64,000 bases of DNA from positions 26,254,343 through 26,318,342 of the forward strand of contig OZ037766.1 of assembly GCA_964035545.1 (NCBI GenBank), in the 5' to 3' direction. This document shows positions 5,001 to 35,035 of the stretch, in pieces (positions within the stretch are counted from its first letter, which is position 1; each line of letters opens with the position of its first letter). The position numbers and the translations under genes were made by a program. The notes under the pieces were generated by a model. The model was given only the letters and a program-made list of their open reading frames with translations. It ran no database searches and had not been told where the DNA came from. The DNA comes from Bugula neritina (lineage: Eukaryota; Animalia; Bryozoa).

Positions 5001-7479
5001 TATATGTAGAATCTGTCATTTATATATGACTGAGTTAACTATTGTTAGCATATATACACTACAAAGTAATAATATATTATATACCACAGAGTAGTATTAT
5101 ATTATATACTACAGAATAGTATTATATACACAACAGAGTATTATTATATTCTGTTATTCACTGAGTTAACTATTATCAGCATATTCTGTATACAGTTTTA
5201 TTAGTTCTTACACTTACCTACATAATACTAGCTTGTCATAATTTACTATAGCTTACTTACACTGTTATGAAGGCGATCTAACAATTAAAGACAAATACAA
5301 TCTTTGGTTATCTTGTACAGAGTGTAGAAATTATGCTATTTTTCTTACCAAAACTACTTATCAATATTTATATATAATTATGTTTTGGGTGTTTTATCAT
5401 AGTCGACCAATAGAAATCCATCTACTTAAAATATGTGTGTAGTTATCTTCTCTATTAATATATGCACAAGACTATAATTTATGCACCTACAGAGTATACA
5501 GTGTTGCATTTTCAATTTCTAACATCTATTTCTAAGTCCAAGATAATTCATTACATTATGTTCAATACTTTGTTGTACATTGCAGCTCTACACTCTATTG
5601 TTTCCAGATCGTATACAGGTTAACACAAAAAGATGACAAAATAAAAGCCCCATTTTAAATGATCACAGACATTAATCGGCTATTTCGTACTACTATGCTG
5701 CTATGCTATACCTTAGAGACACATCGCTTTCAATTTATTGCCTGACCCTAAATACATGATATATGGCAGAGAGTCATCAACATTGAACACATGATTTTAA
5801 TACCTTCCTGAATTGCCTTGCTGACAAAAGAACCTATACGTCATCACAATGACCAGTACATCCTTTTAGCATCTCCCTGCTATAAGACACATGCCCTTTT
5901 AAAGAGCTAAATTTACCCCTACAACACCCTATCTCCAAGAAGCTGACATTCACAGGCAGGAACTCCTCAATGCTATCCAAAAAAACTTGCAGGAGCTACT
6001 TCGCTATATATAGCTCTGCTGGATATGCCAGAAGTGTTCCTCAATCCAGGTAGATCCAACAACAGCAGAGAAGTTAGCATATTTAAGAGAATCCATAATA
6101 AAGGTAATTATTAACTTCTATTATAATATATCCGTATAGTGATAATAATATTATAGTGAATGCACCTATAGGAACCAAATATATTATTGCATTTGTAAAT
6201 TGTACAATTAAATACCAACACACTTTACAACAAAGTTACTACAAGATCTCCTTTATCGGGTCACAACTATTAATATTAATTTTACATGCAAGTCAATATA
6301 AGTTAGACCTTTAATTTGTGCCTAATGCATGCACACGCATATAGATATAATTAAAAGTCTGATTTTCAGTTTGATATCTATTAAAAAAGAATAACCTGAT
6401 AATTTAGGTAATTATAAAACTTATATTTACTGCAAAATTTAAATTCAAATAACTAAAGTCACAAAATTGAAACAGTTTGATAAAATAAAGTGGTGGAAGA
6501 GTTTAATGTCCAAAAAATAATTTTTATTGTCCTTGAGAAAACAACTCCAATTAATCTAGCCTACAACTGCAATAATTGACTTTGAAACTACTTGTAGAAA
6601 TAAATGCATCTGCAAGATTTGTCTAAAATATTATACAATCATAAATGCTGGTTACTTTACTATTAGTTTTTCACTGGTTTACAGAATTTAGAGTTGAACT
6701 TTTATAACAGTCTTATGAAAAGTTGCTAAGCACAGTAATCTTGATGTTTATATTAGTTCAAAGCTTGGATTTTATCATAAAGTGTAGTTCAAAATACAAA
6801 TTATTTCGTAGTGGGTCTGTTGTGATTGGAGTTATGTCATCATGGTTTTTGGACAAATAACAAGCCTTGCGATAGCTGAGAACTGAATACACATGTGATC
6901 ACCTGAAGACTTATGATACTGGTTTGAACTTGGTAAGCTGAGCTAATATTAAGATTACTATTACTATATTATAATTGCTGACTCGTGTTACTTATCTGGT
7001 CAGACAGGCCTTGGCCTGCTACTGCAGAAAACAGGAGCTTTAGAAATATTATGTGTAATATAATCTAATTATTGCATTTCATTCTTGAGATATAGGAAGA
7101 TCACAACATTGTAATTTATATTGTCAAAATAGACTATATTTTTTGCACACTGAAATAAAAGAAAATATCATAATTTTATGAAATTTGTAAGCAATTTGGA
7201 GTTGTCTTTCCAGAGACGAACTAAAGCTTCTATGACAAAGTTAATTTATACAATTATGAATGTATAAGTATTTGTGATCAGATCAAATAATAGTATTAGC
7301 TATATAAACACTCATTCTGGTTGTCAGAAATTATGCTTAAATTGCCGATTTGCAACAAAATAATAATTCCTCATGCCCTGAAAAGGATTTTGTGGAACAA
7401 ATAAAAGAACTATTGATATAAAATTTCCTGTCTACACAACACTGCACACATGTGACAATATGCAATCAGTCTGCATAAA

Positions 7480-7945
7480 TTAGAGCAAAATGCATCCGGA
7501 TGAATCAGAACTTGGATATCGAGCCAAGAGGTCTTCAGCGCTGCAGGCACATTTCAATAACAAGATAACTCTTTTGTTATCCATTCCACTATCTTGTCTC
7601 ACTGTGTAGTGGCAGTTAGGGCTGTAATGTACCTCTTCATCGTCACGGAAGTTTTGACAGTAACAATTACGTTTTAAAATGTACTTCCTGTAAAATTTAA
7701 TAAATTTAGTTGACGTTAGAGTAACCTGTTGATAGCAACTGCCTTTTATACATTAAGGGTTTTAACTAAAGTCTCATGATGCTGGTATAAAAGAATAGTG
7801 CTCACCCTCCACGCCTTTCTGGAGCCTCATAGCGACATCTGCTGTCAGTGTGAAATCCTTCAATTTTTTTGTGGCGAGTCACTTGCCCAGAAACTGTAGC
7901 AGGCTCATCAGAGTAAGACTGGAATTTTCGGCCTGGGTTCGCCAT
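7480..7945 (-). CDS. Cluster gene A: 115-aa double H-x4-C...CxC protein ending in CaaX (CILL); coding exons 7945-7806 and 7687-7480; non-coding exon 1 with donor at 8514
   Basis: Hand-spliced: MANPGRKFQSYSDEPATVSGQVTRHKKIEGFHTDSRCRYEAPERRGG|KYILKRNCYCQNFRDDEEVHYSPNCHYTVRQDSGMDNKRVILLLKCACSAEDLLARYPSSDSSGCILL*. Phase-2 GT-AG intron shared by all six paralogs. Confidence 0.88.
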
Positions 7946-8514
7946 TTCTAGATCAATAAGAAAGTTGCTACAAAACTGATGAACCAGGTTCTATACAGCA
8001 GAAGTTATGTAATATTTTTTATTTGAACGACCACCTTAAAAATACTATTGATATGATAGAGATTAGCACTTTAAATTATTGACACAGTTATACCATGTAT
8101 AAAACTTAAACAGAATAAAGCTAAGACTCTACAGTAATAAGCTTTTTATCTACGAAGCTTTGCTGTAGATATAGCTAGTTTTTTGTTAATAAAAACTCCG
8201 ACGTTTCTCATTTATAGCACTAGTTATGGAAGAAATGGAAGAGAGAGCTGTAATTTTTTGTGCTATGCTATGTTGGACTCTAATAAAGATTTTAGCATGC
8301 ACTACTTTATTTTCCACAAAATCACTTGGAGAAAAATTAAAAATCTTACTAAACATGTGTATAGCAACTGTTTCAAAATTTTCTTTCATCAAAAATAACA
8401 AAGTACCATAATCTATTGTATAGTATAACACATAATGCAATACAATTTGCCACCCAAAATTAACATCAATATTTATAGTATTGCAATAACTAGAGCTGAA
8501 GACAAGCCACTTAC

Positions 8515-8770
8515 CTTTAATAGTTAACAGTTAGAACAGTCAAATATAGAAAGACAGAACTGTAACCAGATGCAGGTTAATACTTTTATCACAGATTCTC
8601 TCTAAATGTAGAAGCATAGAAAAGGCAGCTGCTTTTATATGCCATCTTTAGAAAACCAACTCGTATTAAATTTTTTCATGACACATAAATGTTGTGAGTT
8701 GGAATTCCAAACTATAAGCTGATCATTACAAAATCAATTGCAGTTATTTCAGCATGGAATTTCCATTAGA
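8515..8770 (-). promoter_or_regulatory. Gene A promoter and non-coding exon 1: TATAAAA 8633-8639; kB-like sites 8701-8708 and 8756-8764
   Basis: GGAATTCC and GGAATTTCC on the + strand; the proximal site is AGAAAACC (8650) versus GGAAAACC in B; donor AAG|GTAAGT at 8515/8514. Confidence 0.7.
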
Positions 8771-10258
8771 CAATAGAATAATGCATGCAGCAAACTAGAA
8801 TTCAAGTGCAGTATGTGATATACTATTATATCTCTCATGGTTCTAACTACAATCGTCTACCAGTACGCAGCAAACTAATTGCAAGAGTTTAGTATCACTG
8901 CACATTAAGATGCAGGCAATTTCATGTATGTTGGTCTGTGCACATAATCCTCAGTCTTGGTGTATGAAAAATTCATGTGAAAAGTTTCGGATATTTTATT
9001 CTCTATATTGGCTGTGAGTTAAATAGTTCAAAGTTCGATTGATCTCAGTAGTTAAGATTCTTTAAATTTAATAAAAATATTAAATTAACAACACAGTGTA
9101 TAGCCAGCAAGAAGCCAGGGTTTAAGCATTGCTTCTATCTACAGCTCATGTGTATTTTACTGCAGTTTTGCACTACAAACCAATTTCAGCATAACAAAAT
9201 AAACAGATTTTGGTGGTAGGTAGTTTTTGATGATGGCTAAACCCACAGACTAATAAACAGCTATCCTGCATAAGAATAGCATACTGACATAATAGCACTA
9301 TGGCAGACTGGCTCTAGTCAACATCTTATTACCCATCAAATTCAACAATTAGTTGTGGCAGAAAGCTATTGGCTAATCAGGTGATGCTGTGTTAGTCTAA
9401 AATCTAAATGTATTTCTACTGGAGGCGCCTACAAAATGTGAATGGTAATTTTGAGCATTATAAGCTAGACAGTATTCATATTTTGAGTTCAGTTTTTTTT
9501 AGGTAGCAGTTAAGGCATTGGGCCAAACTATATATAGCTGAATTGCACCGTAAAAAAGAAATTGTAATTGCCGTTGTTAAGTTTTGTGTTAGAATGTTAA
9601 AGATCTGTATATAGCACATTCAACATAAGTTAATTGTTGATGATTAAAGTAATTTCTATCTATAAAAAAATATAAAAGGGAAAAGTACTTTAATACAGTA
9701 AGCATATATTAGGCAGTAAAAGTTTTAAATGTTGAGGTTGCACAATTTTGAAAGTAAAATACTCTTTTATTATTCTTTTGAATAATTATACTTCAAAATG
9801 CAGTTTTTAGGTTCATCTCCACCTAGGACAGAAAACAGGATCTTTAGAAATATTATGTGTAAATTGTCCAATCTAATTATTGCATTTCAATCTTGAAATA
9901 TAGAATGGTCACAATTGCAATTTATACTGTCAAAATAGACTACATTTTTGCACATTGAAATACAAAACTACCATAACTTTATGACACTTGGAAGCAATTT
10001 GGAGTTGTTTCTACGAAGACAAACTGAAACTTCCATGACAAGGTTTGTTTAAACAAATATATTATGCATAAATAAATATTTGTGATAAGATCAAAATAAT
10101 AGCATCAGCTATATATAAGCACCCATTCTGGTGGTCAGTATTTACCCTTAAATTACTTATTTACAACTAAATAAAAACCTCCTAATTTGAAAAGGATTTT
10201 AAAGAACGAATAAAAGAAGTATTGATATAAAGTTTGCTGTCAATATGAAATCAGCCTG

Positions 10259-10757
10259 CTAGGAGATAATGCATCCACATTGATCAGGGGTTTCGGCCCC
10301 CCTGAGTGGCTTTGGATAGCGACTTAAGAGGTTTTCAGTGTAACAGGCACATTTCAATAAAAGGATCACTCTTTGGTTCTCCATCCCACTATCTTGTCTC
10401 ACTGTGTAGTGACAGTTAGGGCTGTAATGTACCTCTTCACCATCATCAAATAGTTCACAGTAACAGTCACGTTTTAAAATGTATTTCCTGTAAAATTGAA
10501 TAAATTCAGTAGACACTAGAGTAACATCCTAATAGTAACTGTTATAAATTCTACATTACTTGTTGCAAATTAGTATATAAGAGTTTTGTGCTATTGGCAT
10601 TAAAGAATAGTACTTACTCGCCACGCCTTTCTGGAGACTTATAGTGACATTTGCTGTCCATGTGAAATCCTTCAATCTTTTTGTGACGAGTCACTTGCTC
10701 AGAAGATGTAGCAGGCTCAATGGAATAGTTTGAGAACTTGCAGCCAGGATTTGTCAT
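10259..10757 (-). CDS. Cluster gene B: 122 aa, ends QCGCIIS (CaaX); coding exons 10757-10618 and 10487-10259; exon 1 donor at 11325
   Basis: MTNPGCKFSNYSIEPATSSEQVTRHKKIEGFHMDSKCHYKSPERRGE|KYILKRDCYCELFDDGEEVHYSPNCHYTVRQDSGMENQRVILLLKCACYTENLLSRYPKPLRGAETPDQCGCIIS*. Confidence 0.88.
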
Positions 10758-11325
10758 TTCTAAATCGATAAGAATATTGTTCCAAAACTGTTGACTCTAA
10801 TTCAAAACAAAAAAATATGTAACATTTTGTTATTTGAATGACTAGCTAAAAATAATATTGGGTTGATAGAGATTAGCACTTTAAAATGATGATGAAGTTA
10901 TCCCATATATAAAACTTAAAAAAATAAAGCTAAGACTCTACAGTAATAAGCTTTAACTTATCTACAAAGCATTGTTGTGGGCAATGCTAGCTTTTTGTTA
11001 ATGTAAAAGCCATTGTTTTGAATTTATAGTAATAGTTATGAGAGAAATGGTAAAGGGTTGTAATATTTATGCTATGTTAGATTCTAATTAATATTTGATC
11101 ATTTTTCACTATATTACTCAGAGAAAAATTTAAGATATTACTAAACATGTGTAAAGCAACTGTTTCAAAATCTCCCTTCATCACAAAAGTAACAAAGTAG
11201 CGTAATCGAACATAGTTATAGTATAACATATACAAGTTATATATAATGCAACACAAATGGTCACTCAAAATTAGCATCAATATTTATAGTATTGCAATAA
11301 CTAGAACTGAATACAAGCCACTTAC

Positions 11326-11570
11326 CTTTAATAGTTAGTAGGTAGAACAGTCAAATATAGAAAGAGAGGACTATAACTGAATAATTTTATCACAAATTCT
11401 CTCCATGTGCAGAAACATAGAAAAGGCAGCTGCTTTTATATGCCATCTTTGGAAAACCAACTCGTATTAGATTTTTTCATGACACATAAATAATAAGAAT
11501 TGGAATTCCAAACTATAAGCTGATCCTTACATGATCAGTTGCTGGTATTTCAGCATGGAATTTCCAGTAG
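11326..11570 (-). promoter_or_regulatory. Gene B promoter: TATAAAA 11434-11440; kB-like sites at 11451, 11502, 11557
   Basis: GGAAAACC, GGAATTCC, GGAATTTCC; homologous to the promoter of A. Confidence 0.7.
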
Positions 11571-12599
11571 GCAATAAAACAATGCATGCAGCAAACTGGA
11601 ATTTAATCCTGGGTATGCGATATACTATTGTAATATCTCTCACAGTTCTAACTACAAATACAGTATCCACCAGTACGCAACAAACTAATTGCAAGCGTTT
11701 AGTATCACTGCACATTAAGATGCAAGCAGTTTTGTTTATGTTTGTTTGATGTGCACAAATATAATTCTTAATCTTAGTCCATGAAAAATGTATGTGAAAA
11801 GTTTTGGATATTTTATTTTTTAAATTGGCTTTGAGTTAAATAGTTCCAAGTTCGATTGATCTCAGAGATTCTTTCAATTAAAAAGAAACATAAAGCTCAC
11901 AAAATTATAGTGTATAGCTGGTAAGAAGCCAAAGCTGACCCATTGCTTCTATCTACAGCTCAGCTTATGTGTATTTTGCAGTTTTGCACAGCAAATCTTT
12001 CAGCATAACAAAACAAACACTTCAAGTGATTATAGTAGGTAGTTTTTGATGATGGCTAAACCCACAGACTATTAAACAGCTATAATATTGCATAAGAATA
12101 TATAATCATAGCATACTGGCTATACTTAGAACCTTTCAACTATAGTCAGCATTTTGTAGCCAATCAAATTGTGGTGGAAAGCTGTTGGCTAATCATGCTG
12201 GCCATACAATGGGAATAGGAATTTTTGAGCATTATAAGCTAGACAGTATTCTTGATTTCAGTTCAGTTTTCCTTTAAGTAAAAGCTAAAGCATTGGGCCA
12301 AACTATAGCTGAATTGCACTGTAAAAAACAAATTTCGACTACCAATACTGAGTTTTAAGTTAGAGTGTTGGAGATCTGTTTGGAATATGGCACATTCAAC
12401 ATGAGTTCATTATTGTCTATAATTAAAGTTATTTCTAGCCATAGAAAAAAGTTAAAAGCAGTAAGTAAGTTAATATAGTCAGCATATATTATGCAGTAGA
12501 AAATGTTGAAAATTGAGGTTGTACACAATTGTAAACTTCAACTGCTCTTCTATCATTCATTCGAATAATTATATTTCAAAAATAATATGTTGGAATATA

Positions 12600-12870
12600 T
12601 TTTATGAGAATTCCCAAATGTAAAGCAAGATCTGCAGCTATTTTTAGATTAATGCAAAACATAATAGCCTGCATTTTCTGAAAGGCAGGCTTGGAAATCC
12701 AACTTGGAACATAACTTTTTGCTTGCATGTACAATATTCCATTATTGCTTGATGGAATTCCCATTGAATGATTTATGCAAGAAAATGGAAATTCCAATGC
12801 TCAAGTTCCCAATAACAACAATGACTCATCACATACAGCGCTATTCCTAATTATCACACGTGATGTTTTA
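12600..12870. promoter_or_regulatory. Distal kB/AP-1-like enhancer block, copy 1
   Basis: GAGAATTCCC 12606, GGAAATCC 12693, GGAATTCCC 12754, GGAAATTCC 12787, TGACTCA 12822; homologous to 18220-18430. Confidence 0.55.
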
Positions 12871-13516
12871 ACACTTCACAACAAACTATACTGAGATGTG
12901 AAATGTAAGGCTTGAGTTGATGCTTTACCTTTGTACATTTTTCGGTGCTTTTAGTCAATAAAAGTATTTATAGAAAACATAAACATGATTATATTTGTAT
13001 TCAAACATGGAACTATGTAACCACGTTTGTATTTTTTCAGATCAAGGCAGCCTCATGCTGCCAATAAATTTGTGGCTGAACGCTATTGGCTAACCACGTC
13101 ATGCCGTATTAGTCTAAACGAATTTTGTAGTTTATTAGTAATTTTTCTAGAATGATTATCAGCAACTTTTTGCCATTTGATATATAAATGTGTAGTCTTG
13201 AGTTTAGTAGAAGAAACATAAGGTGTTATTTTTTGTTTAACTTGTGAATAATTATTGTCTCTAATTTAATTTTAAAACCAGAAATGAGGTTTGAAAAGAG
13301 TAATCTGGTATAAGTGAATAAATTTATTGATGGTAATCAGTAATTGTAACTGTGAATGTAATTTTAAGTAATTAAAATTGACAAAACAAATTTTATAAAT
13401 GAAATCTGTACCTCTTTCATTGGCCACTCAGCATAATGCAGAATAAATGCACAATAAAGTAAATATTTTGTAGTCAAATGACATTCAAAAACAGAACACT
13501 AGGTATATTGTTATAA

Positions 13517-14237
13517 CTAATATCCTGGTTTTGGAGATCGACTCAGCAGTCTTGGATTCACACAATAGCATTTCAGCAGTAAGACAACATTATTAGTACC
13601 AGTGTCTTGCCTCACGGTATAGTGACACTGATCACTGCCATGTACTTCATCACCAGCATCAAATCTTCCACAATAACATTTACGGCGTAGAGTGTAGTTC
13701 CTACAAAATCGTACACATAGATTATATATAACACTGAAGACTAGAATACTTGTACTATTAGCACATAATTGTTAAAAGATCTTCATGATTTCAGTAACTT
13801 AATTAATCATTAGAAGGGAAATATATAGAAGCTAAAACCCGCCTAGTATATGAATGAAAAAAAATAAAAGAAATGTTATTTCAAGTGGTTGAGTTTTTGA
13901 GCCAAATGCTCAAAATATTATTTTAATAAGTATTCATATAAAAAAACACTCCTAACTTAGAATTTTTATAATTAAAGTTTAGGTTGAACAAATATTTTTA
14001 CTATTTACAGTAGTATCTGCACAATAATTATTCTATATCACATCACCTGTTGCAAATAATATTATTGAGATCTCATTTTATAGCATAGAATACTTACCGC
14101 CCATTCCACTGTGCCGGCCCATAGCAACAATTGCTGTCAGTGTGAAATCCTTCAATCTTTTTGTGTGACACAACTTGCCCAGAAACTGTGGCAGGCTCGT
14201 TAGAATAAGATGAGAAGGTGCGACCACGATTTGCCAT
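13517..14237 (-). CDS. Cluster gene C: 107 aa, no CaaX; coding exons 14237-14098 and 13700-13517; exon 1 donor about 14729
   Basis: MANRGRTFSSYSNEPATVSGQVVSHKKIEGFHTDSNCCYGPAQWNGR|NYTLRRKCYCGRFDAGDEVHGSDQCHYTVRQDTGTNNVVLLLKCYCVNPRLLSRSPKPGY*. Confidence 0.86.
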
Positions 14238-14729
14238 GTCTAAATAAGAAACAAGGTACAGCTATTTTAAAATTGATGACCATGACTTTATGCAAAAGTT
14301 TATGAAATATTTGTTTATTTATTTCAACAGCAAATATCTAAATAATTAATAAATGCTTCTTAACTTTAGTTTTGCATGATTATTTCTATTCTAAAAAAAT
14401 TACCAGTTAATGGTAATTAGCAAAATAAATGTAATTTCAAGAGCAAGCTGTTTTATTCTAAAGTAGCTTTGACTTTAAATTTCTTTGAAACAGTAACATA
14501 TAACTTGGTTGATGATGACTATCGGTAAAGTGAACTTATAAAATTATTAAAAGTTTGTGTTTCTAGAAAAAGATATATCAATATACTAGGTAGGTAATTA
14601 ACAATACAGAGATAACTAACTTAGCTAGTGTTTTCCGTATACATTGACACACATTTTTGCAACCTCATCTAAATGCAATACTTCTGCTTATACAAAATTC
14701 AATATCGCAGTGCATAGAAAGACACCTAC

Positions 14730-14960
14730 CTTCGTATGCAATACTTGTGCTTACACAGAGTTCAATATCACTGATTCTCTCCAAATGCAAGGACATTGAA
14801 AGTGCAGCTGCTTTTATATGTCCAGTTTGGAAACCCAACATGTATTAGATTTTTTATTATTATTCAAAAAGATCTGGAATTCCAATATTACTATCCTGAA
14901 TTGCATCACTTAGCCAATGCAAAGCTATTGTGACGTATTAGCATGGAATTCCCAATTAGT
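14730..14960 (-). promoter_or_regulatory. Gene C promoter: TATAAAA 14812-14818; kB-like sites at 14829, 14876, 14945
   Basis: GGAAACCC, GGAATTCC, GGAATTCCC; same order as in A and B although the spacers have diverged. Confidence 0.7.
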
Positions 14961-15504
14961 CTACAATAGAGCAATCAATGCATGCGGCAACCTATTATGT
15001 GAATAGAAGCACATATAATAGCATGACTGATGCATTGCAGTAACAGCTCCCTGAGTGCCCTGTATATGTATATTAGAAACGAATGAATTTCTACCTACTG
15101 CGGGCCATATTACCTTCATCTGCTGCTCTAACCATACATCAAATGCCAGGTTTTATAATCAGATCATATAACAACTGGTATACAGTTTTTTGCCCGCGAG
15201 TTGAAGGCCTGTATATAATACTATATATATAATACATTCAACATAAGTGAATATATTTCTAACTGTAACAAAAAACAAGAGTTATAAGTAGTTTATTACA
15301 GTCAGATTATGCTGTTAAAATTTTGAAAGTTAAGGTTACACAATTTCGAAATTAAAACCCTCCTTTATCACTCATTTGAATAGTTATACAAATAAAAATG
15401 CAGCTTTAGGTTTATATTTAGAGTTGGAAGTGTCGGCGAAGTGAATGAAATTCTGCTTTTAAATCATTTAACTTAAGAAGGATTCAGTTACGGGTACACC
15501 TGAA

Positions 15505-16425
15505 CTACATTATTTCACATCTGCTCTGTTCAGGATCGGCATCTATCAATATTGGATGATTACAGTAACATTTTAGCAGCAAGAATGTGCGATTATTCCC
15601 TGTGTCCTTGATAGTGACATAGTGACATTGTGGGCTATAATGCAACTCGTTGGCGTCATAAAAATTCCCACAATAGCAGTAACGTTCAAGATAGTAACCC
15701 CTGTAAACAGTAAAGACAGTAGAAATACGATACATATTATTACCGTTTTTTTCTATAAGCAGAAGGAGGTAGGTTGGGGTGGGAGATCAGCAGATTTAGA
15801 TAATGGCTGTGTAATTGCTATATACTCACTAAAAGGCACCAAGTTATATGAATTACTAAAAGGTCTGTTATGCAATTACAGCAATACTCATTGAGATTAT
15901 GTTGCTCTGTAGCTATAGTTGCTGTTCGGAAATTTAATATAACATTTTATTCTGCTAACCAGGTCAAAGTTCAAATGAGTAAATTAATTTTATAAGTTAC
16001 CTACAGAGTTTACTTGTTTTGTCAATTAGCGGAGAGCATTTTTTGTAGGCACTTAAAACGTTATAATTGACATAAACTTGCTTGCTAAAAAGAATTTTGT
16101 TGCTTTTTAAATTTGTATTGTCATGAAGCAAAATAAATTTGTTCTTTTTTTCTGTTGTCTCATAAATAGTATTTCAGACAGAAATTATGAAAAAATATTG
16201 AATTATTATTAATAATTTAACAAACATGGGATTAAGTTGCTTAGTCCATCAAAATGCATGGTGACTGAGCATTGGCCTATATACATACCCGCCAGGGCTC
16301 ATCCATTTTTTGTAGCAACAATTATTATTAGTGTGGAAAGTTTCAATCTTTTTGTACTTTGTAGGTGAACAGGTGTCCAGACCATCTTTATAATGTTTAC
16401 ATTCTTTAGGTCCAGGATTTGCCAT
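15505..16425 (-). CDS. Cluster gene D: 110 aa, ends RCEIM (CaaX-like); coding exons 16425-16289 and 15700-15505; exon 1 donor at 17653
   Basis: MANPGPKECKHYKDGLDTCSPTKYKKIETFHTNNNCCYKKWMSPGG|GYYLERYCYCGNFYDANELHYSPQCHYVTIKDTGNNRTFLLLKCYCNHPILIDADPEQSRCEIM*. Confidence 0.87.
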
Positions 16426-17653
16426 GATATCTAAATCAATGTAAATGGTCCATGTTGTCATACTAATAGTAATCAATAATTTGTAGTTCTGTAGAGTACT
16501 ATACTGGAAAAAATAATTGACAGCTTAGTTATCTAGTAGGTTCAAGAAATTGGTAGCCACATCACTTATGGAGTATTCTAAGTTAAATTAAAAACATATT
16601 TATATGTATTATGTACTGTTCTGCAACCATTTTACAGTTAGCATGCTTTAGTGTATGAAATTGAGTAATTGATGTGCATGCAAGTATTTATTATTGTTAC
16701 AGACTTATTACAATATATTACATCAAAAGTTTTGTAATTGTACATGTATCTACTATCTATATAACACAGCAATATATAAAACAGTTTATACATATACATT
16801 ATACATTTATATATAATACAGTTTATTAAGCAAAACATTGTGCTAGAAGTGTATTAGCTTTCTCTTCTATAGACATATCAGCAAAATGTTGTATTAGATT
16901 AAACAAATGAATATTTTTTAAAGGTGTAGTGTATTGTTTTGCTATAAATAATGCTGATGATAATATAAGTTTGGCTTTGGTCTTGCTGTTTGATTTAGTT
17001 GGAAATGAGATGAGCAAATAATAATTTTGAAAGCAAAATATTCAAACAAATTGATAATAATAAGAATACATGACTATATTTTAAAAAATATAGAAGCTTT
17101 TAGCTGATAGGCTAGCATTTTGTTTAACTTTTGGTTGATTATTATATGCATCAAAACTTCCATGTCAATTACTCAAATTATATGTATATATATGTAAACA
17201 AATCCATTATAAAAATTAAATTAATTTGTTCTCATCTCATTATTTATAACTGGCTAAGTCACAGCCTCGTTCAAAAAGTTGTATTAAACAAACATGCTTA
17301 TGGTATTCTAAGAACTCCACTGGTAACATGCTAGATATTGAAACAATATTATGTCAAAGGTGCTGACTATAATGTTAACATACTCATTATATAGAGACAA
17401 ACATAAAAAGTTATTTGAGTTTTACAGATTGGTGCATAAAAACTAAAAACCTGCATGTATATTATATAGATTGCAAGTTAATATAAATATTAGTAAATAA
17501 CATACAAAATAATTTGTTTTTACCACAAAATTGTCACTGTATTTTCTTTTTTATATTATTATATATATAATAGTGCGAGATTAAATGTAGTAAACAATAG
17601 GTTTGGTAGCTAATTTGATAGACATATATGCTAAGATATAAAGTATTACTTAC

Positions 17654-17830
17654 TGAATCAGTTAGCTACTTGTTCTAAGCAAGATATACTCCAACAAAAA
17701 TTTTTTTTCATAAACTTAGAAGCAATAGGAAGATGTTGCTTTTATACTACGCTGTTGGAAATCCAGTTTGTAAAAAAAGTTTCCACTGATTAACTTTGGA
17801 AATGGGAAATTGCTTACTTGGGATTTCCAA
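17654..17830 (-). promoter_or_regulatory. Gene D promoter: TATAAAA 17740-17746; kB-like sites at 17757, about 17777, 17820
   Basis: GGAAATCC, AAAGTTTCC, GGGATTTCC; closely similar to the promoter of E. Confidence 0.7.
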
Positions 17831-18219
17831 TAACAGCCGTTAGAATTGCATGTTTCATGGATTTTTAAATTTTCATTAGTAATAACAATAATAGTATTCT
17901 GTTTTGTTGTACAACACGCACGCTCATAACACATTTATTAGAGTTTACAATTTTCGATAAGTTGCAGCTGATAGGAATAAAAAACTCATAAATAGATTGA
18001 AAAACTTTTATCACACATTGGCATTTGCAAATTTACACTGCTTCAGCTATAAATAACGTGGTTCAGGTAACAATATAAGAGTAACATTGTGTCAACCTGC
18101 ATTTAATATAATTATGTATTTATAAACGTTCCATTATCACTGTAATTTTATGTCATTATTATGGTATAAACTATGATATTACTCTAGAATTGTTTTTTAT
18201 ATTAAACGCACGTTTACCA

Positions 18220-18430
18220 CCATGCTTTTCTGAAAGGCAGGCTTGAAAATCCAACTTGTAACATAAGATTTTGCTGGCATGTGCAATATGCAATTATAGC
18301 TGGATGGAATTCCCATTAAATGCTTTATGCAAGAAAATGGAAATTCCCATGCTCAAGTTCCCAATAACAATCATGACTCATCATAAACTAAGCTATTCCT
18401 AATTATCACATGTGATGTTTTAACAGTTCA
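18220..18430. promoter_or_regulatory. Distal kB/AP-1-like enhancer block, copy 2
   Basis: GGAATTCCC 18306; GGAAATTCCC 18339 (GGGAATTTCC on the - strand, full kB consensus); TGACTCA 18374. Confidence 0.55.
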
Positions 18431-19359
18431 CTGCATACAGTGTTAAAGCACAAATAATATATAAGAATTATATTGCTTTAATTGTGAACATTAATGTTAC
18501 TTAACTAATTAATAATGGCAATAAACATGTGCATCCATCAGTTATTCGGTAAAAACTCATTTTGAAAATAACTTTTGTATTCTTATTGCAACTTACAAAT
18601 ATTTATAAATATGTTTCTAATCTTTGTTCAAACATAAAAACTGATAGCCATGTAGATGTTAATAGCAGTTAAACTCTCATAACTGCGTTATAAAAGTTAT
18701 TTTAATTCTTATGAAATAATATTACAAAGCATAGCTCATAAAACTAGTCCTTTAGTAAAAAGATAACAACATCTGATGTATGTAATCAGCAATTAAACTT
18801 CTTCTGCTTTGCTAATGCTAACAAGGGATCAAAGGTCAGACTATTTTATACTTGAAAAAATTATAATATGCACATAAATTCTGTGTGCTTGAAGTGTGTG
18901 GACTGTCCCATTTAATCAATGTGTTGCAGCTTTCAGTTGTAAGTAATAACTGGTAGGAAAAGTGTTGATTATATCATGTATGTAGGGGACACTGAAACTT
19001 TTATTGAATTATATATAATCATATTATAATATGCAAGGCATTTATAACAGTAAACTTCAAAAAATCAATGTGTGGATTTCAAATACAGTTTATTTGGCTA
19101 ATATATTATTCCATATTTAGTTTTTTGCAATATTTTAAATGCTGTTAACTTGCTTTTGTTATCAATTTAACATGCTATGTATTTTGCAGTTAAAATGATA
19201 TTTTCCAAAAAGTGTATACATTTAAAGATTTAATAATGTTTTAAAAACTAGCAAAAATTTATGAAAACACATTCAAAATTACAATTTATAACTTGATATA
19301 TCACATATTTTAAACAAAATTTTTTAAAGAATCAAGAGGAAACGTTAGATGAATATGCT

Positions 19360-20165
19360 TTAGACAAAGTCCGTAGTCTGGCATTTGCAATTTGAAACAA
19401 AGTAGGTTTGGCCAGTGCGGCGATCTTTATATCCAATGTAGTTACAATCTGGGTGGTAATGTTGCTCTTCAGCCCCATTAGTATAATTCCAGCATTCACA
19501 TCTCCTCACCAGGTAATATACTTTACCATACCATGGGCTAGAATTTTAGAAACTAACTTTTTAAACCATCTTGTGTTTTACATGATTCTAAGACTGCATA
19601 CATGACACAAAGTTTTTGGCACATCAAATGTTCACTAGTATCCTAATATACAAACTTGTGGCAACATCTAATTTTATTAACAAACAGAAGTGTTCGATGT
19701 TATTGGCCGAGAGCATAAACTTATCAAAATCTTTAATATTTGAATATAATTAATCTGATACCAAATAATCAGAATATGACAAGCTTAATATATATCATGT
19801 TTTGCATTGAATAAGAAATTACCTTAAATATTATTTATATCTTATATTTATTATCTCATTATCTTAATTAGGATTCAGAAGTTAAATCTTAGCCTTCCTA
19901 TACTAGATAGGAAATACACTTCTCAATAAAATTTATTATCTGGCAAAAAATCATTTAAATATATTATAAGATAGTTATAGTTAAAATAAGGGTATTCTGT
20001 AACAGCATTATTGAGTTCTACTCACTCGTCAACAGACTTTGATTCGTAAGAGCAGCTGGAAGCAGTGTGGGGTCCTTCAACCTTCTTTCTGGGATGAATA
20101 GTTGATTCTTTGCTTTCACGGGTGTTAACATAATAGTTGCTTGGCAAGGTGGGTGTGAAAGCCAT
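19360..20165 (-). CDS. Cluster gene E: 105 aa, ends TTDFV; coding exons 20165-20026 and 19537-19360; exon 1 donor at 21096
   Basis: MAFTPTLPSNYYVNTRESKESTIHPRKKVEGPHTASSCSYESKSVDD|PWYGKVYYLVRRCECWNYTNGAEEQHYHPDCNYIGYKDRRTGQTYFVSNCKCQTTDFV*. Confidence 0.86.
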
Positions 20166-20188
20166 ATCTCTGGGTTAACTGTAATAAT

Positions 20189-20190
<2 letters not shown>

Positions 20191-20266
<76 letters not shown>
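20191..20266. repeat. (TA)n microsatellite just inside intron 1 of gene E
   Basis: Direct observation. Confidence 0.97.
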
Positions 20267-20269
<3 letters not shown>

Positions 20270-21096
20270 TACTATAAAGCTTTGTTTTCATGTGTAAATT
20301 TATTTGTATTTTAACTTAGAAATGTAAACTTACTTTTCATGCAAAAAATACTATTTTGATAGAAATGATTTTTTTAGATATAATATCAATATGAAAAAAT
20401 AGAAATGCTTCTGCAATTATTTTTATATATGCATCTTCACAATTAGTTAATTTTTCATTGTGACTAACTAAATTTATTGCCACCATTCCTAACCGAATTT
20501 TATTACAGCTTACAGCTGAAGATTTTTTTACAACCATAACATCACGATTCAAGTATATAAAAATAGTAACTACATTGTAAATTAGTAAATATAACTTTTT
20601 ATGTAATAACTTCTAATCTCTATATTGCTCAAACGATAATATGTATTTCAACCTATGAACATTATTATACATTATAAAGTTACATTAGGATTCAATAATC
20701 TTAGAGCTGCCAAAGAAGCAGCTGCATGCTCTCAACAACTTATATCAAGCTGAAAGTTTTCTATTTCCTTCTAATAACTTCACTTCATTATATACGAGGC
20801 ATTTAAATAATATGTTCACTGTGATCATTATCAGGATGACCGTAAGATAACACATAACTTGAGTTTCATGAATTAGTGCATCCTGCTGGGATACCACATG
20901 CCCACAGATTAAACAGAGTAGTATAGTGAAATATATATTAGATACTGCTACATATTATGCAAAACAAATATTGATTTACTATATATTTTAGTTAAATTTA
21001 CCAGAGTATGACATAACATATGTTTAAGAATAAGCAGAGTTTTAATAAACAAGTATTAAACCCTAATTTAATGTAGAGATATAAAATATTACTTAC

Positions 21097-21340
21097 TGAA
21101 TGAGTTATAGCTACTTGTTCTAGGCAAGATACTTTAGCAAACTTTTTTTCATAAATTAAGAAGCAATGAGAAGATGCTACTTTTATACTACGCTGTTGGA
21201 AATCCAGTTTGTATAAAAAAGTTTCCACTGAAATTTGTTGACTTGGGATTTCCAACAACAGCCATTGCATCATAGCTTGATGGAATTCCTAATAAATGTT
21301 TTATGCAGGAAATGGAAATTCCAATGCTCAGGTTGCCAAT
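21097..21340 (-). promoter_or_regulatory. Gene E promoter: TATAAAA 21181-21187; kB-like sites at 21198, about 21218, 21245, 21282, 21314
   Basis: GGAAATCC, AAAGTTTCC, GGGATTTCC, GGAATTCC, GGAAATTCC; the last two are the distal enhancer block joined directly to the core promoter. Confidence 0.7.
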
Positions 21341-21831
21341 AGCAACAATGGCAGAACATACTCAACTTTTTCCAAGTTGAGCTCCCATTGAGTAACTGAG
21401 TTACAGCTTTCAGTTGTAAGTAATAACTAGTTATATTTATGAAATGTGCTGATCAAGTCATCTATGTTATAGTGGACATTGAAAACTTTATTGAGTTATA
21501 TATGCATAATCATAATATTATTATGCAAGGCCTTCATAACAGTAGGTAAATTTAGAAAAAATCATGTATAGATTTCAAATACAGTTTCTTTGGCTATAAT
21601 AGATCATTTAAATTCTTGTATTAGGCTATTATAAATTACTTTAAATTGCTTTTATCAATAATCTAATACATTCTATATTTTCAGTTAAAGCTCTGTGTTT
21701 CAAAAAATTATATACATGATAAGCTGGCAAATTACTTTTTATGAAAACATATACAAGTAGGTGACAAGTTAAGAAAGTGCATCTTTTATACTTTAAAAAA
21801 ACGTCAAGAGACAATATTAAATGAATATGTT

Positions 21832-22618
21832 TTACACAAAGCTTTTAGCCTGGCATTGGCAATTCAAAACAAAAAAGGTATGTCCGGAGCGGCCATCTTT
21901 ATATCCGGTGTAGTGACAACCAGTGTCGCCGTGCTGCTCTTGAGCCTCGTCGGTATATCTCCCGCAGCCACATCTTCTCACCAGATAGAACTTCTGATTG
22001 TAGCATGGACTAAAAGTTATGAGAATAGCTTTTTTAATAATCTTGTGATTTACGTAACTATATAAGCAGCACACTTGACACAGAATGTTACTGGCACATC
22101 AAATGGTCACTATAGATGTATGCTAATATCGTGCTAACTCCTGGCAGTTTGTTAAATATTGCGGTAGTTATTTGCATTAACTTGTCAAAATTCTCAATAC
22201 TTGAAGAGAATTAAGCTAACACCAAATAAACGGCATATGAAACGTTTATGTTTTCATTGAATAAAAAATTATCTTATAAAATATGATACAAGTTTTATAT
22301 CATTTACAGTTTACACAAATTTATGATTCAGGCAGAAGTTAGATTTTAGCTTTTTAGTGTAGATAGAAGATAAATTCCTCATTAAAATTTAGTATGTGGC
22401 ATAAAAAAACATTCAACTATTTTATAAAGTAGTTATAATAGTTGAAATACAACATCATAATTGAGTTCTACTCACCCGCCAATAAGCTTTGATTCATAAG
22501 AGCAGCTGGCAGCAGTGTGGGGCCCTTCAACCTTTTTCCGGGAATGAATATTTGACGACTTTGCGCTGTCGAGGGTGTCAACGTAATAGTTATTTCTCAA
22601 ACTGGGTGTGTAAGCCAT
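21832..22618 (-). CDS. Cluster gene F: 106 aa, ends AKSFV; coding exons 22618-22476 and 22009-21832; exon 1 donor about 23254
   Basis: MAYTPSLRNNYYVDTLDSAKSSNIHSRKKVEGPHTAASCSYESKLIGG|PCYNQKFYLVRRCGCGRYTDEAQEQHGDTGCHYTGYKDGRSGHTFFVLNCQCQAKSFV*. Confidence 0.86.
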
Positions 22619-25690: not shown

Positions 25691-28600
25691 CTAGTCCCTC
25701 AGTTTCCCTGCTACCTTATAGTTTTTGTAGGAAAGGGCTACTTTCCTTACTACGCCATCCTTGCTCGGATATACTTGATGTACTCGAGCTAGTTTATACT
25801 GATTACGCAGCTGACTTGGATCCATAACAACTACAACATCTCCCACCTGAAAGTTCCGTCTTGGGGTATGCCACTTTTGGTGATGAATCAGTGTGGGTGC
25901 ATACAATTCGGTCCACTTCCGCCAGAAGTCATCTGAGACCGTATTTACCAGAGCCAGTCGCCCGCCACGAATGTTGACAAATCGAGTTAATGCCAACAGG
26001 AAAGAATCACTGTCATATCCGAAAACTGCTTCGATGTGTGCTGCTCGTAAACTGATGTCTGTGAACATTCCTCCATAAGCTTTGCTCGAAGTTCTAGTCT
26101 GTTTTTCTCCTCTCACAATATTTGGACCAAAAAGATCTATCATTACATTGTTGAACGGCGGTCCGGTCGTTAGTCGTTCTGTAGGTAGACTTCCCATCAG
26201 TTGATCAGTAAAGCGAGGTTGTTTGAGTCGACACATTTGGCATGATGTTACTATGCCCCTAGCAACCTTAGATCCCTGCATAGTCCAAAACTCTTCTCGG
26301 AATCTTGCGAGTGTTGCATCTCGGCCATGGTGATAGCTGTCTGTATGTGCCTGCCGCATTGCCAAGTAGGTAAAGTAGTGAGTGGTGGGAAGGATTGATT
26401 GCGTGTGCGTTTTAATCGCTGTCATGGGGTTATGCCTTAGGAGTCTACTGCCTACTATCCATAATCCACTCTCTGTCTTGATGGGGTGAAGTCTTGTATA
26501 TTTCCCTTTAATCTTGTTCAACTCGGAATCTATAGTATGTTGTACCTGCTTCAGTAAGTAGAGTTTGGTCTGCCGTAGATCTTCCACGGTGATGAGATCA
26601 GATCGGATTCCCTTAAAACTTTTGTACTTGAAGATGTTGCGAACTCGAGCTATTGTCCATGTTAGACTCTTGAGACTGCTGAAATTTTCATATTTAACAA
26701 ATGATTGGACTTCTGTTGAAGCAGTGACGGTGTAAACTATTTTCTTCTCTCCAAAGACAAGCTCATTCGAGTCAGATGGCGATTTTATATCCCACTGATC
26801 CTCAGGCAGATAGAGAAAATTTGGGCCTCTCCACCATTCACTCGCAGGTCCAATGTCATTGACAGGCTTCCCTCTTGTAAGCCAATCTGCTGTGTTTTCC
26901 TTGCCACTTACCCAGTGCCAGCAGCTCATATCTCCATTGGTTGCTCCCTGAATTTCTCCAACGCGTACACCCTCGTAAACATGAAACCTTGTTGACTTCT
27001 TTTGGAGCATCTTGAGCACTGTTTCAGAATCTATAAGCTGATAAACTTTCTCAAACTTATAGCGCATTTCAGTCTCGATAACTCGTCTGCCTCTCTTTGA
27101 CAATACGGCCGCATTGAGTTCTAGTTGAGGAATCTTTAGTTGTTGTTTCATGGGTGCTATACGACATTTAGCTAAAATCAATGCACACCAGTATGTTCCA
27201 TCCTGCCTTTTCCATCGCACATATGCACTGAATCCATAGGCTATTGCGCTGGCGTCAGAGAATATCACTAGGATAGGTAATCCCACAGCATCCTTAGGAC
27301 GCAGACATCTAGGATATTGATGCTCAGTAAGGGAGAAGATATCTCTAAAGACTTGTATCCATTTCCTGCTCATCTCTGTAGGCAGTTGATCATCCCACTC
27401 AAGTTTTTGTTCCCATGTGTCTCTCAGCAGAAGTTTTGCCTTCAAAGTAAATGGTGAGAGAATGCCAAGTGGGTCGTAGATTTTCATTGTCTGCTCTAAT
27501 ACCATCCTTCGGGTGAGTATGTCTGGAATTGATTCGGGTATTTGGGCTATGGTTAAATCTGGCTGTGTGTAAGCTCCTTTCTTTTTGACAGAAAAATTTA
27601 TTCTAGCCGGGAATGAGAGAACATCTGTTTGGGGCATCCATTTAACACCAAGTACATGGGTGTTGTAGTCTTCATATTGATTTTCAGCATCTGTACTGTT
27701 GTTATTATCCCCACTGAAGAGCCAACCTTTAACTTTGAATCCGCATCTCTTCAGTACAGAGTCGGTATCTGCCGCTACCTGCAGGGCATCATCCTTGAGT
27801 GGAAAAGAGTCCACTATATCATCTACATATGTTGACCTCTTCAAAAGTTTTGCTACTCTTGGAAAATCCTTGTGAAACAGATCTGCTGTTTTGTAAAGAG
27901 CCTCTGTACTAATTGCTGCAGCAGGTCGATCCCCCATATTGACCCTCAGAATAGTATAGACATCTGGCTTTCTGTCTTCCATATTCCGCCACAAGAAACG
28001 ATGAGTGTGTTGCTCAATCTCCCTTATAAATATTGAATTGTACATCTTCTTAATGTCAGCTACTAGTGCTACAGGTTCCTCTCGCCAGCGAAGCAAAATG
28101 CCTAACAAATCATTGAGATAGGAATCTGGACCTTTGGCTAAACAAGAATTCAAGGATGTTCCTTTGTATGTTTGGCTGGAATTGAACACTATTCGCACTG
28201 GTGTTGATGTTGATTTGGGATTCTGAACGGCTAAATGGCTGAGATAGTAAATAGGTCCATTCCAACTTCTCAGCTCCTCCTCATCCAGTTTATGAGCTAC
28301 TCCGCGATCCACCATGTCTTCGATCTGGTTATTGTATCTCTTGCTCCATTCAGGGTCCTTTCGGAGAGTTCGTTCAGTGTTGCGTAAAGTGGACAATGCG
28401 GCTTGGTAGTTATTTGGTAGAGTAGAAGGATCCCTTATCCATGGATAGGCTGTAATCCACCTTTCGTTGCTCTCATCATATTCTAGGTTAGAACGTATCA
28501 TCTGAAGTTCTTGCTCCTCTTTGAATGAATAGGTATGTCCCACTACTGGACATTTTCCACATTGGCAAGCTCCACATTGTGGCTGAATTTCTATGCCCAA

Positions 28601-31321: not shown

Positions 31322-31344
31322 GTCAGCCTCAGCAATATTGGTAC

Positions 31345-31795
31345 TGTATCGGTTTGTGTTTGTGTCTGGTTGCAAGATATGCTTTAACTACTAGCCAACT
31401 TGGCAACAGGTTTTCGAGTTTATTAACTGTCAAATCGTACCCTATAAAATGGGAAACATTAGAAATTGTATAAATAAGTAGTCACAATATAAATCAAAAT
31501 TCAGAGGAACACTATGAATATTACAGAACCAAAAAATTGACATGAACTATTGTAATTCTAATAAACTTACAATATTGATGCGTGGATAAAAATCTTAGCC
31601 ATCACAATACCGAAACCGATAGTTTGTCCATACAAAGTGTGTAAATATGGCGGTTTGATCATGATACACTGACTCATGCAGTACAGTGAATGAACTAGCT
31701 CTGCCAGCTAATAGTAGCTTTGGTGAAAGCTTTTGAAGCTTGAAAGCTTTAATGATTGGCTGCCTGCCAATACTTCTGGGTGGCATACCAATACA
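31345..31795 (-). repeat. 5' LTR (451 bp)
   Basis: Direct repeat of 24939-25389. Confidence 0.96.

Positions 31796-34249: not shown

Positions 34250-35035
<786 letters not shown>

What the first reader, a model, noticed from the sequence alone, without database searches (positions are those of the whole stretch)
7480..21850. Paralogs carry different C-terminal address tags: predicted geranylgeranyl, farnesyl(+palmitoyl), none, or PDZ ligand
Seen: A ends GCILL, B QCGCIIS, D RCEIM, C KPGY, E TTDFV, F AKSFV. The tails of A, B and D differ in length and sequence, yet keep Cys at -4. Established: CaaX with X=L favours GGTase-I and X=S/M favours FTase; an upstream Cys (as in B) is often palmitoylated, as in H-Ras and N-Ras; S-x-V is a class I and D-x-V a class III PDZ ligand. 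Inference: one core domain is delivered to different membranes or scaffolds by tail switching, as occurs among prenylated versus unprenylated GBP or OAS1 forms.
Basis: partly seen in the sequence, partly recalled or inferred. Interest (0 to 1): 0.8.

Follow-up and report, generated by a model that had tools for sequence, protein, structure and literature searches.

The report
Prenyl-tagged paralogues of a bryozoan zinc protein
Six tandem genes of a bugulid bryozoan encode a small, uncharacterised zinc-type protein; three copies carry a conserved C-terminal lipid-anchor (CaaX) signal of three different kinds, while the proposed PDZ-ligand tags on two other copies are not supported.

Summary
Six minus-strand paralogues end exactly as written: GCILL, QCGCIIS, KPGY, RCEIM, TTDFV and AKSFV.

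- **Gene and protein.** Each gene has two coding exons split by a phase-2 intron. The proteins are 105-122 aa, have no signal peptide, and carry two His/Cys3 modules.
- **Family.** It matches no Pfam family or PDB sequence, and fold searches gave no convincing match. I found it only in the bryozoans Bugula and Watersipora, with one weak amphioxus hit.
- **CaaX reading: supported in silico.**
  - Only the A-D clade has a long disordered tail of 14-27 aa. At least nine other paralogues in the genome stop 0-8 aa after the last CxC.
  - In seven A, B and D-type sequences from three Bugula lineages, Cys, a2 (L/I) and X (L, S or M by paralogue) never change. The a1 position and 36% of linker positions do.
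  - CIIS, CTIS and CAIM are experimentally proven boxes. The genome encodes prenyltransferase beta subunits, ICMT and Rce1.
  - C looks like a secondary loss of the anchor.
- **PDZ reading: not supported.** The motif is common by chance, and the hydrophobic end of E and F aligns with an internal LL or IL in A-D.
- **Untested.** No RNA data exist, so expression, the true 3' ends and lipidation remain untested.

The scan's earlier notes concern this same stretch only.

The parts
7483..7686 (-). Gene A terminal coding exon (68 aa). The CaaX box CILL is at 7483-7494 and the stop codon at 7480-7482.
   Evidence: The B. neritina orthologue P0001 also ends CILL.
7808..7945 (-). Gene A first coding exon (whole codons; ATG at 7945). 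The phase-2 donor follows two further bases.
   Evidence: The N-terminus is hydrophilic, with no signal peptide.
8632..8639 (-). Putative TATA box of gene A. A putative non-coding exon 1 follows, down to a GT donor near 8516.
   Evidence: Conserved in A, B and C. Inferred from sequence only.
10262..10486 (-). Gene B terminal coding exon (75 aa). The CaaX box CIIS is at 10262-10273, with a second Cys two residues upstream (10277-10279).
   Evidence: The B. neritina orthologue P0003 ends CSCTIS.
10620..10757 (-). Gene B first coding exon.
13520..13699 (-). Gene C terminal coding exon (60 aa). The tail stops after ...SPKPGY and has no Cys.
   Evidence: Both B. neritina copies end ...SPKPGF. dN/dS is 0.8-0.9.
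14100..14237 (-). Gene C first coding exon.
15508..15699 (-). Gene D terminal coding exon (64 aa). The CaaX box CEIM is at 15508-15519.
   Evidence: A JGI Bugula contig (L008, 90% identical DNA) ends SSCEIM. The B. neritina D-like paralogue ends NCAIM.
16291..16425 (-). Gene D first coding exon.
   Evidence: The donor was read by eye.
19363..19536 (-). Gene E terminal coding exon (58 aa). Its tail is 6 aa long and ends DFV.
   Evidence: B. neritina P0010 ends SDFV.
20028..20165 (-). Gene E first coding exon.
21835..22008 (-). Gene F terminal coding exon (58 aa). Its tail is 6 aa long and ends SFV.
22478..22618 (-). Gene F first coding exon.

Best explanation
**The family (shown).** The six genes are a tandem family in a bugulid bryozoan. 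They encode small cytosolic proteins with three parts:
- a disordered N-terminus;
- a six-stranded beta core holding two His-x4-Cys...Cys-x-Cys modules;
- a C-terminal tail.

That the two modules are zinc sites is inferred, not shown.

**The tail and its CaaX box (inferred from the tree and alignments).**
- The ancestral protein ended a few residues after the last CxC.
- In the ancestor of the A-D clade the tail was lengthened to a flexible hydrophilic linker of 14 or more residues ending in a CaaX box.
- A kept or acquired X = Leu.
- B has X = Ser, plus a second Cys two residues upstream.
- D has X = Met.
- C lost the distal tail.

**Predicted lipidation (inferred from established enzyme rules; no lipid was observed).**
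- A is geranylgeranylated by GGTase-I.
- B is farnesylated and may be palmitoylated on the neighbouring Cys. That is a two-signal anchor of the Ras2/H-Ras type, expected at Golgi and plasma membrane.
- D is farnesylated, with possible cross-geranylgeranylation as for other C-x-I-M boxes.
- All three would then be trimmed by Rce1 and methylated by ICMT.

**Consequence (inferred).** One core domain would exist in three differently lipid-anchored forms and in soluble forms (C, E, F and the other paralogues).

**E and F.** Their FV ends are the family's ordinary hydrophobic C-terminal dipeptide, not PDZ ligands.
For: **Gene models**
- The six window genes, and four further paralogues that were modelled, have two coding exons and a conserved phase-2 intron.
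- These models match the database proteins of B. neritina.

**Cytosolic location**
- Exon-2 products are hydrophilic. The highest 12-residue Kyte-Doolittle window is 0.24 or lower.
- The upstream exon of A holds only a short ORF that stops before the donor.

**Tail length and flexibility**
- Only A-D have tails of 14-27 aa. At least nine other paralogues in the genome end 0-8 aa after the last CxC, and none has CaaX.
- AlphaFold gives pLDDT 87-91 for the core and below 50 for the last 12 residues.
- This fits the roughly 11-residue flexible linker that PrePS found to be required upstream of CaaX (PMC1175975).

**Conservation of the box**
- In seven A, B and D-type sequences the residues are: C invariant; a1 I, I, I, T, E, A, E; a2 L, L, I, I, I, I, I; X L, L, S, S, M, M, M.
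- Between close homologues the linker differs at 19 of 53 positions. None of the 9 C, a2 or X positions differs (P about 0.02).
- Neutral divergence is dS 0.12-0.24, and dN/dS is 0.33 for A and 0.49 for B.
- The A and B boxes are homologous at the DNA level and differ only in the last two codons.

**Tree**
- The terminal-exon core gives (D, D', (C, (A, B))), with support 86/74 for the A-D clade and 97/93 for A+B+C.

**Validated boxes**
- CIIS is yeast Ras2. It is farnesylated, is not cross-prenylated, and has a palmitoylated neighbouring Cys (PMC11152559).
- CTIS is human GBP-1. It is prenylated in vivo and is enough to send GFP to the Golgi (PMC2998424).
- CAIM is lamin B. It is fully modified by FTase and partly by GGTase-I.
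- CEIM has a Ydj1 heat-map score of 4.59, above that paper's cut-off of 3, and a Ras score of 16.2, against 19.9 for CAIM (PMC10320760).
- CaaL boxes are GGTase-I substrates.

**Enzymes in the genome**
- Three or more PF00432 loci, plus ICMT and an Rce1-like gene.
Against: - No transcript, protein or lipid evidence exists. No RNA run holds this stretch, so expression and use of these terminal exons are unproven.
- The species compared are close (noncoding identity 86-93%). The conservation test therefore has modest power, and the sequences are paralogues descended from one origin.
- PrePS states that negative charge at a1 or a2 is disfavoured. D has Glu at a1, although the yeast screen tolerates it.
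- A and D have no second membrane signal, neither a polybasic stretch nor a Cys, so stable membrane binding is uncertain.
- The B. neritina reference has lost the terminal exon of its collinear D copy. C evolves almost neutrally. Parts of the family may therefore be dispensable.
- CILL itself was not found as a tested box in the papers read.
Confidence: 0.58

Rival explanations
1. The Cys at -4 is a passenger. The long tail of A-D arose once and happened to end in C-x-aliphatic-x. It persists only because the paralogues and species are young, and the proteins are not prenylated.
For: - The species are close (noncoding identity 86-93%).
- All CaaX boxes trace to one origin.
- There is no experimental evidence and no RNA run.
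- The family evolves fast, and C evolves almost neutrally.
Against: - D and the A/B pair are only about 50% identical in the core. Their tails differ in length and cannot be aligned, yet all end in C-x-[IL]-x at exactly -4.
- The substitution pattern is position-specific in the way the enzymes require.
- Canonical boxes occur at only 0.56% of random frame ends here.
Confidence: 0.2
2. E and F are targeted to PDZ scaffolds through class III (D-F-V) and class I (S-F-V) ligands.
For: - The last three residues fit the textbook patterns.
- E's DFV is kept in B. neritina P0010.
Against: - The patterns occur at 6.4% (class I or III) to about 20% (any class) of random ends in this window.
- The related short-tailed paralogues end QLV, QLA, QLI or SAY, or have no tail at all. 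Only the hydrophobic last two residues are shared, and -2 is not.
- The same pair aligns with an internal LL or IL in A-D, where it cannot be a free C-terminus.
- The tail is only 6 residues beyond the last putative metal ligand.
Confidence: 0.07
3. The quoted tails are not the real protein ends. Either the transcripts splice from within the last exon to other terminal exons, or some copies are unexpressed pseudogenes.
For: - No RNA data are available.
- A has no AATAAA or ATTAAA within 800 nt after its stop.
- B. neritina has a D copy without its terminal exon.
Against: - Frames and stop positions are kept between species without indels in the A and B tails.
- Independent database gene models of B. 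neritina end at the same residues.
- dN/dS is below 0.5 for A and B.
Confidence: 0.1
4. The tail cysteines serve as extra metal or redox ligands that fold back on the zinc core, not as lipidation sites.
For: The protein is rich in conserved Cys and His. B has a CxC in its tail resembling the core CxC motifs.
Against: - The tail is predicted to be disordered.
- This idea does not explain a fixed distance of exactly four residues from the C-terminus despite variable linker length, nor the conservation of a2 and X.
- A and D have a single tail Cys.
Confidence: 0.05

Closest known systems
Ras/Rho-type hypervariable region with CaaX box (yeast Ras2 CCIIS, H-Ras CKCVLS, CaaL boxes of Rho proteins)
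   Same: - A disordered hydrophilic linker followed by C-a-a-X at the very C-terminus.
- B's box is identical to that of Ras2 and has a Cys close upstream, as in Ras2 and H-Ras.
- X = L, S or M distinguishes the paralogues.
   Different: - The cargo is not a GTPase. It is a roughly 70-residue beta domain with two His/Cys3 modules and no known family.
- No polybasic second signal is present.
- Lipidation is not demonstrated.
[quoted passage not shown]
   Same: - Paralogues of one family differ in having a farnesyl box, a geranylgeranyl box or no box.
- The B. neritina orthologue of B carries exactly CTIS.
- The promoters carry kappaB-like sites, which hints at inducible expression.
   Different: - The proteins are unrelated: small zinc-type beta domains versus large dynamin-like GTPases.
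- No immune function has been tested.
OAS1 p46 (CaaX-bearing isoform) versus p42 (recalled from memory, not checked here)
   Same: The presence or absence of a C-terminal CaaX re-addresses the same catalytic or binding core.
   Different: In OAS1 the switch is made by alternative splicing of one gene. Here it is made by duplicated genes with diverged last codons.
TRIM proteins with a variable C-terminal recognition domain (Watersipora subatra XP_067948808.1, annotated TRIM5-like)
   Same: The same double His/Cys3 domain forms the C-terminus of a RING plus coiled-coil protein in Watersipora. This suggests it is a binding module.
   Different: - The window's genes encode the domain alone.
- No RING hit adjacent to a domain hit was found in this genome.

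Membership tests
CaaX substrates of FTase / GGTase-I | Cys exactly four residues from the C-terminus | tested here: met
   - A, B and D meet it.
- It is kept in the B. neritina A and B orthologues, in a D-like paralogue, and in a third-lineage D orthologue.
- C, E and F do not meet it.
CaaX substrates of FTase / GGTase-I | An uncharged, preferably aliphatic a2, and an X residue of an accepted class (L for GGTase-I; S, M, Q or A for FTase) | tested here: met
   - a2 is L, I and I; X is L, S and M.
- The rules come from PMC1175975 and PMC11152559.
- CEIM has a heat-map score of 4.59, above the cut-off of 3.
CaaX substrates of FTase / GGTase-I | A flexible hydrophilic linker of about 11 residues before the Cys | tested here: met
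   - There are 14-23 residues between the last core Cys and the CaaX Cys.
- pLDDT is below 50 for the last 12 residues of the B orthologue model.
- Between the last CxC and the CaaX box the tails hold few hydrophobic residues apart from the LL or IL pair.
CaaX substrates of FTase / GGTase-I | Cytosolic exposure: no signal peptide and no transmembrane segment | tested here: met
   Hydropathy of the exon-2 products. The start codon is conserved across ten paralogues. No dedicated signal-peptide predictor was available.
CaaX substrates of FTase / GGTase-I | The modifying enzymes are present in the organism | tested here: met
   PF00432 at three or more loci, PF04140 (ICMT) and PF02517 (Rce1-like) in the window's genome.
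CaaX substrates of FTase / GGTase-I | Covalent isoprenoid on the Cys | not testable with these tools
   Needs metabolic labelling, mass spectrometry or an in vitro enzyme assay.
Dual prenyl + palmitoyl anchors (H-Ras, N-Ras, Ras2 type) | A further Cys within a few residues upstream of the prenylated Cys | tested here: met
   B has C-G-C-I-I-S, and the B. neritina orthologue has C-S-C-T-I-S. Acylation itself cannot be tested here.
PDZ-binding C-terminal ligands (class I and class III) | A class-defining residue at -2 and a hydrophobic residue at 0 on a free, accessible C-terminus, conserved as such | tested here: inconclusive
   - E and F fit the pattern.
- The pattern is frequent by chance.
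- The -2 residue is not conserved across the short-tailed paralogues.
- The hydrophobic pair is internal in A-D.
Any described protein family or fold for the core domain | A significant match to Pfam, PDB sequences or known structures | tested here: not met
   - Pfam: none.
- PDB sequence and profile searches: none.
- ESM Atlas search by sequence: no usable hit.
- Foldseek against PDB: E at or above 0.45.
- VIA-align: best Z 4.3, to the vaccinia A46 N-terminal beta-sandwich.
- ESM Atlas: TM at or below 0.40.

The most novel reading that the evidence does not exclude
The family is a bryozoan-specific class of small zinc-stabilised binding domains used in inducible cell-autonomous defence. The supporting hints are:
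- all examined promoters carry kappaB-like sites next to the TATA box;
- the proteins evolve fast;
- the same domain is the C-terminal module of a TRIM-like E3 ligase in Watersipora.

The A, B and D paralogues would have diversified their lipid anchors (geranylgeranyl, farnesyl plus palmitoyl, farnesyl) to patrol different membranes. This would be a convergent parallel to the prenylated and unprenylated GBPs of vertebrates.
Probability: 0.12. Interest if true: 0.75.

Novelty: new member of a known kind. Interest (0 to 1): 0.45.

Why it matters
**If the tails are lipidated.** This would be a clean natural experiment. Very similar copies of one small domain would be sent to different membranes by changes in one or two terminal codons, in a phylum (Bryozoa) with almost no cell-biological annotation.

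**What the analysis also yields.** It defines a previously undescribed domain of about 70 residues with eight conserved His/Cys. The domain is restricted to cheilostome bryozoans, apart from one weak amphioxus hit, and is fused to a RING/coiled-coil protein in another bryozoan.

**If the tails are not lipidated.** The finding reduces to a lineage-specific orphan gene family with a curious tail.

Tried and rejected
- **Secreted cystine-knot protein (IL-17 or TGF-beta type).** This was my first guess from the CxC pattern. I rejected it because the models have no signal peptide and a hydrophilic N-terminus.
- **Family and fold searches.** No significant match came from any of these:
  - Pfam on exons and on full-length relatives;
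  - PDB sequence and profile searches;
  - ESM Atlas by sequence and by fold;
  - Foldseek and VIA-align on two models.

  A WRKY-like reading of the H-x4-C...C-x-C spacing was considered. It rests on a rank-40 Foldseek row only and was dropped.
- **RNA evidence.** The run search returned only one DNA run. Laying it confirmed the assembly at the B, C and D tails but says nothing about expression.
- **Metagenome scans for further Bugula lineages.** The other found nothing.
- **Aligning exon-2 pieces with full-length proteins.** MAFFT put the first H-x4-C-x-Y module onto the second. I left these rows out of the profiles. The error itself shows the internal repeat.
- **Literature check that CILL is a tested box.** I recalled it for RhoG, but the search found no paper, so the claim is not used.
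- **RING/TRIM fusion in this genome.** I found no RING hit next to a domain hit.
- **CaaX remnant after C's stop codon.** None is recognisable.
- **Joined spliced proteins.** I did not make or search any. Exons were searched apart by reference, and B. neritina database proteins served as full-length proxies.


Full report
**What is there**

The window is AT-rich eukaryotic DNA from a 216-Mb genome. It is not human-like.

A six-frame search finds each of the six quoted tails once, directly before a stop codon on the minus strand. They lie in paralogous stop-to-stop segments that share the pattern CxC...H-x4-C-x-Y...CxC. Self-comparison shows the region is a tandem array of diverged units.

**Gene models**

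I read the minus strand of unit A and compared ten paralogues. Each gene has:
- a TATA box;
- a short upstream exon without a usable start (its only ATG opens a frame that stops before the donor);
- a first coding exon that starts at a conserved Met;
- an intron in phase 2 at a conserved position;
- a terminal coding exon.

The window's six products are 105-122 aa, and the other modelled paralogues are as short as 101 aa.

All searches used the exons apart, by reference. Database proteins of a relative served as full-length proxies.

**Relatives**

- **Word search.** A search with A's last exon found only hypothetical proteins of the bryozoan Bugula neritina, at about 80% identity. Their sequences confirm the exon junction and the start codon.
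- **Profile search.** A search of 1.84 billion representatives found 18 proteins. They come from Bugula and from the bryozoan Watersipora subatra, plus one weak amphioxus protein.
- **A fusion.** One Watersipora protein is annotated TRIM5-like. It has a RING finger and carries the domain at its C-terminus.
- **Known families and folds.** Nothing matched Pfam, PDB sequences or the ESM Atlas.
- **Structure prediction.** With 27 aligned sequences AlphaFold gives a six-stranded all-beta core at pLDDT 87-91. The first 23 and last 12 residues are disordered. Fold searches give no convincing match. The best is VIA-align Z 4.3 to a small viral beta-sandwich.
- **Conserved residues.** The invariant residues are six Cys/His in the terminal exon plus a His and a Cys in the first coding exon. 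They form two H-x4-C...C-x-C modules. That these bind zinc is inference.

**The tails in family context**

The genome holds further paralogues on other chromosomes. They end 0-8 residues after the last CxC, and none has a CaaX box. Only A, B, C and D have tails of 14-27 residues.

A tree of the terminal-exon core groups D-type, C, A and B together (support 86/74). Within that group A+B+C has support 97/93. The tree rests on few columns, so it is indicative only.

The A-D tails share a leucine or isoleucine pair followed by a proline. This argues for one tail extension. Parsimony then gives one gain of tail plus CaaX and one loss in C.

The A and B boxes are homologous at the DNA level and differ only in the last two codons, which give Leu-Leu in A and Ile-Ser in B.

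**Conservation**

The syntenic B. neritina contig was fetched and is collinear at 86-93% noncoding identity.
- Its A copy ends CILL.
- Its B copy ends CSCTIS.
- Both of its C copies end PKPGF.
- A D-like paralogue ends CAIM.
- Its collinear D copy has lost the terminal exon.

A third Bugula lineage, on a JGI metagenome contig 90% identical to the window, keeps that exon and ends CEIM.

Over the seven CaaX sequences, Cys, a2 and X never change within a paralogue type. The a1 position varies. The linker differs at 19 of 53 positions between close homologues, which gives P about 0.02 for no change at the nine constrained positions.

dN/dS is 0.33 for A, 0.49 for B and 0.8-0.9 for C.

**Fit to enzyme rules**

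- X = Leu directs to GGTase-I, and X = Ser or Met to FTase. A flexible linker of about 11 residues is part of the motif (PMC1175975).
- CIIS is the box of yeast Ras2, which has a palmitoylated neighbouring Cys. It is farnesylated only. CAIM, the lamin B box, is farnesylated and partly cross-prenylated (PMC11152559).
- CTIS is the box of human GBP-1 and is enough to send GFP to the Golgi (PMC2998424).
- CEIM scores above the cut-off in the exhaustive yeast screen. That screen finds a1 permissive and charge intolerable only at a2 (PMC10320760).
- The genome encodes prenyltransferase beta subunits, ICMT and an Rce1-like protease.

**PDZ reading**

The class I and class III patterns occur at 6.4% of random frame ends in this window, and any PDZ class at about 20%.

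Among the short-tailed paralogues only the final hydrophobic pair is shared. The residue at -2 is D, S or Q. That pair aligns with an internal pair in A-D. I read it as part of the domain, not as a ligand.

**Limits**

- No RNA run holds the stretch.
- The single DNA run confirms the assembly at the B, C and D tails, but it may be the assembly's own source.
- Expression, the true 3' ends, lipidation and localisation are all untested.
- The function of the core domain is unknown. The TRIM fusion and the kappaB-like promoter sites are hints only.

**Verdict**

- The CaaX interpretation is well supported in silico.
- The PDZ interpretation is not supported.
- The mechanism is a known kind, CaaX tail diversification among paralogues, on a new and uncharacterised protein family.

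Noticed in passing
window 8701-8708 and 8650-8657 (gene A); equivalent sites upstream of B (about 11400-11520) and C (about 14770-14900): A palindromic GGAATTCC and a second kappaB-like site (GGTTTTCT, GGTTTTCC or GGGTTTCC) sit about 10 nt upstream of the TATAAAAG box in A, B and C. This matches the scan's separate promoter note.
   Followed up: partly
window 25694-31387, minus strand: A single open frame of 1898 aa with Pao retrotransposon peptidase, DUF1759, DUF5641 and integrase zinc-binding domains. It is a BEL/Pao-type LTR retrotransposon next to the gene array. I observed it only.
   Followed up: partly
window 34283-34736: An (AC) microsatellite of about 227 units. It accounts for the strong GC skew in that bin.
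   Followed up: yes
L007 about 5443 (B. neritina VXIV02003349.1) versus window 15501-16096 and L008 402-1000: The B. neritina reference lacks about 600 bp that hold the terminal exon of its collinear D copy, and it carries a duplicated C unit. A third Bugula lineage keeps the exon.
   Followed up: partly
window 13490-13522 versus L007 2451 and 7370: Relative to B. neritina, the window has about 32 extra bases exactly at gene C's stop codon. Even so, the protein length is unchanged (last residue Tyr instead of Phe).
   Followed up: no
L007 1741-2453 versus 6629-7372: The two B. neritina C copies differ with dN/dS about 2.1 (small counts: 21 nonsynonymous against 3 synonymous differences). This could be positive selection or relaxed constraint in the anchor-less paralogue.
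   Followed up: no
window exon pairs, e.g. 7808-7945 and 7483-7686: The protein is an internal duplication. MAFFT repeatedly placed the first H-x4-C-x-Y module (first coding exon) onto the second module (terminal exon).
   Followed up: partly
G000:C6:14531979-14536148 (L001), C5:6040512 (L002), C5:3669446 (L003), C7 (L004, L005), C2:26563258 (L006): At least nine further family members lie elsewhere in the genome, including a second tandem trio on C6. All have short tails without CaaX.
   Followed up: partly
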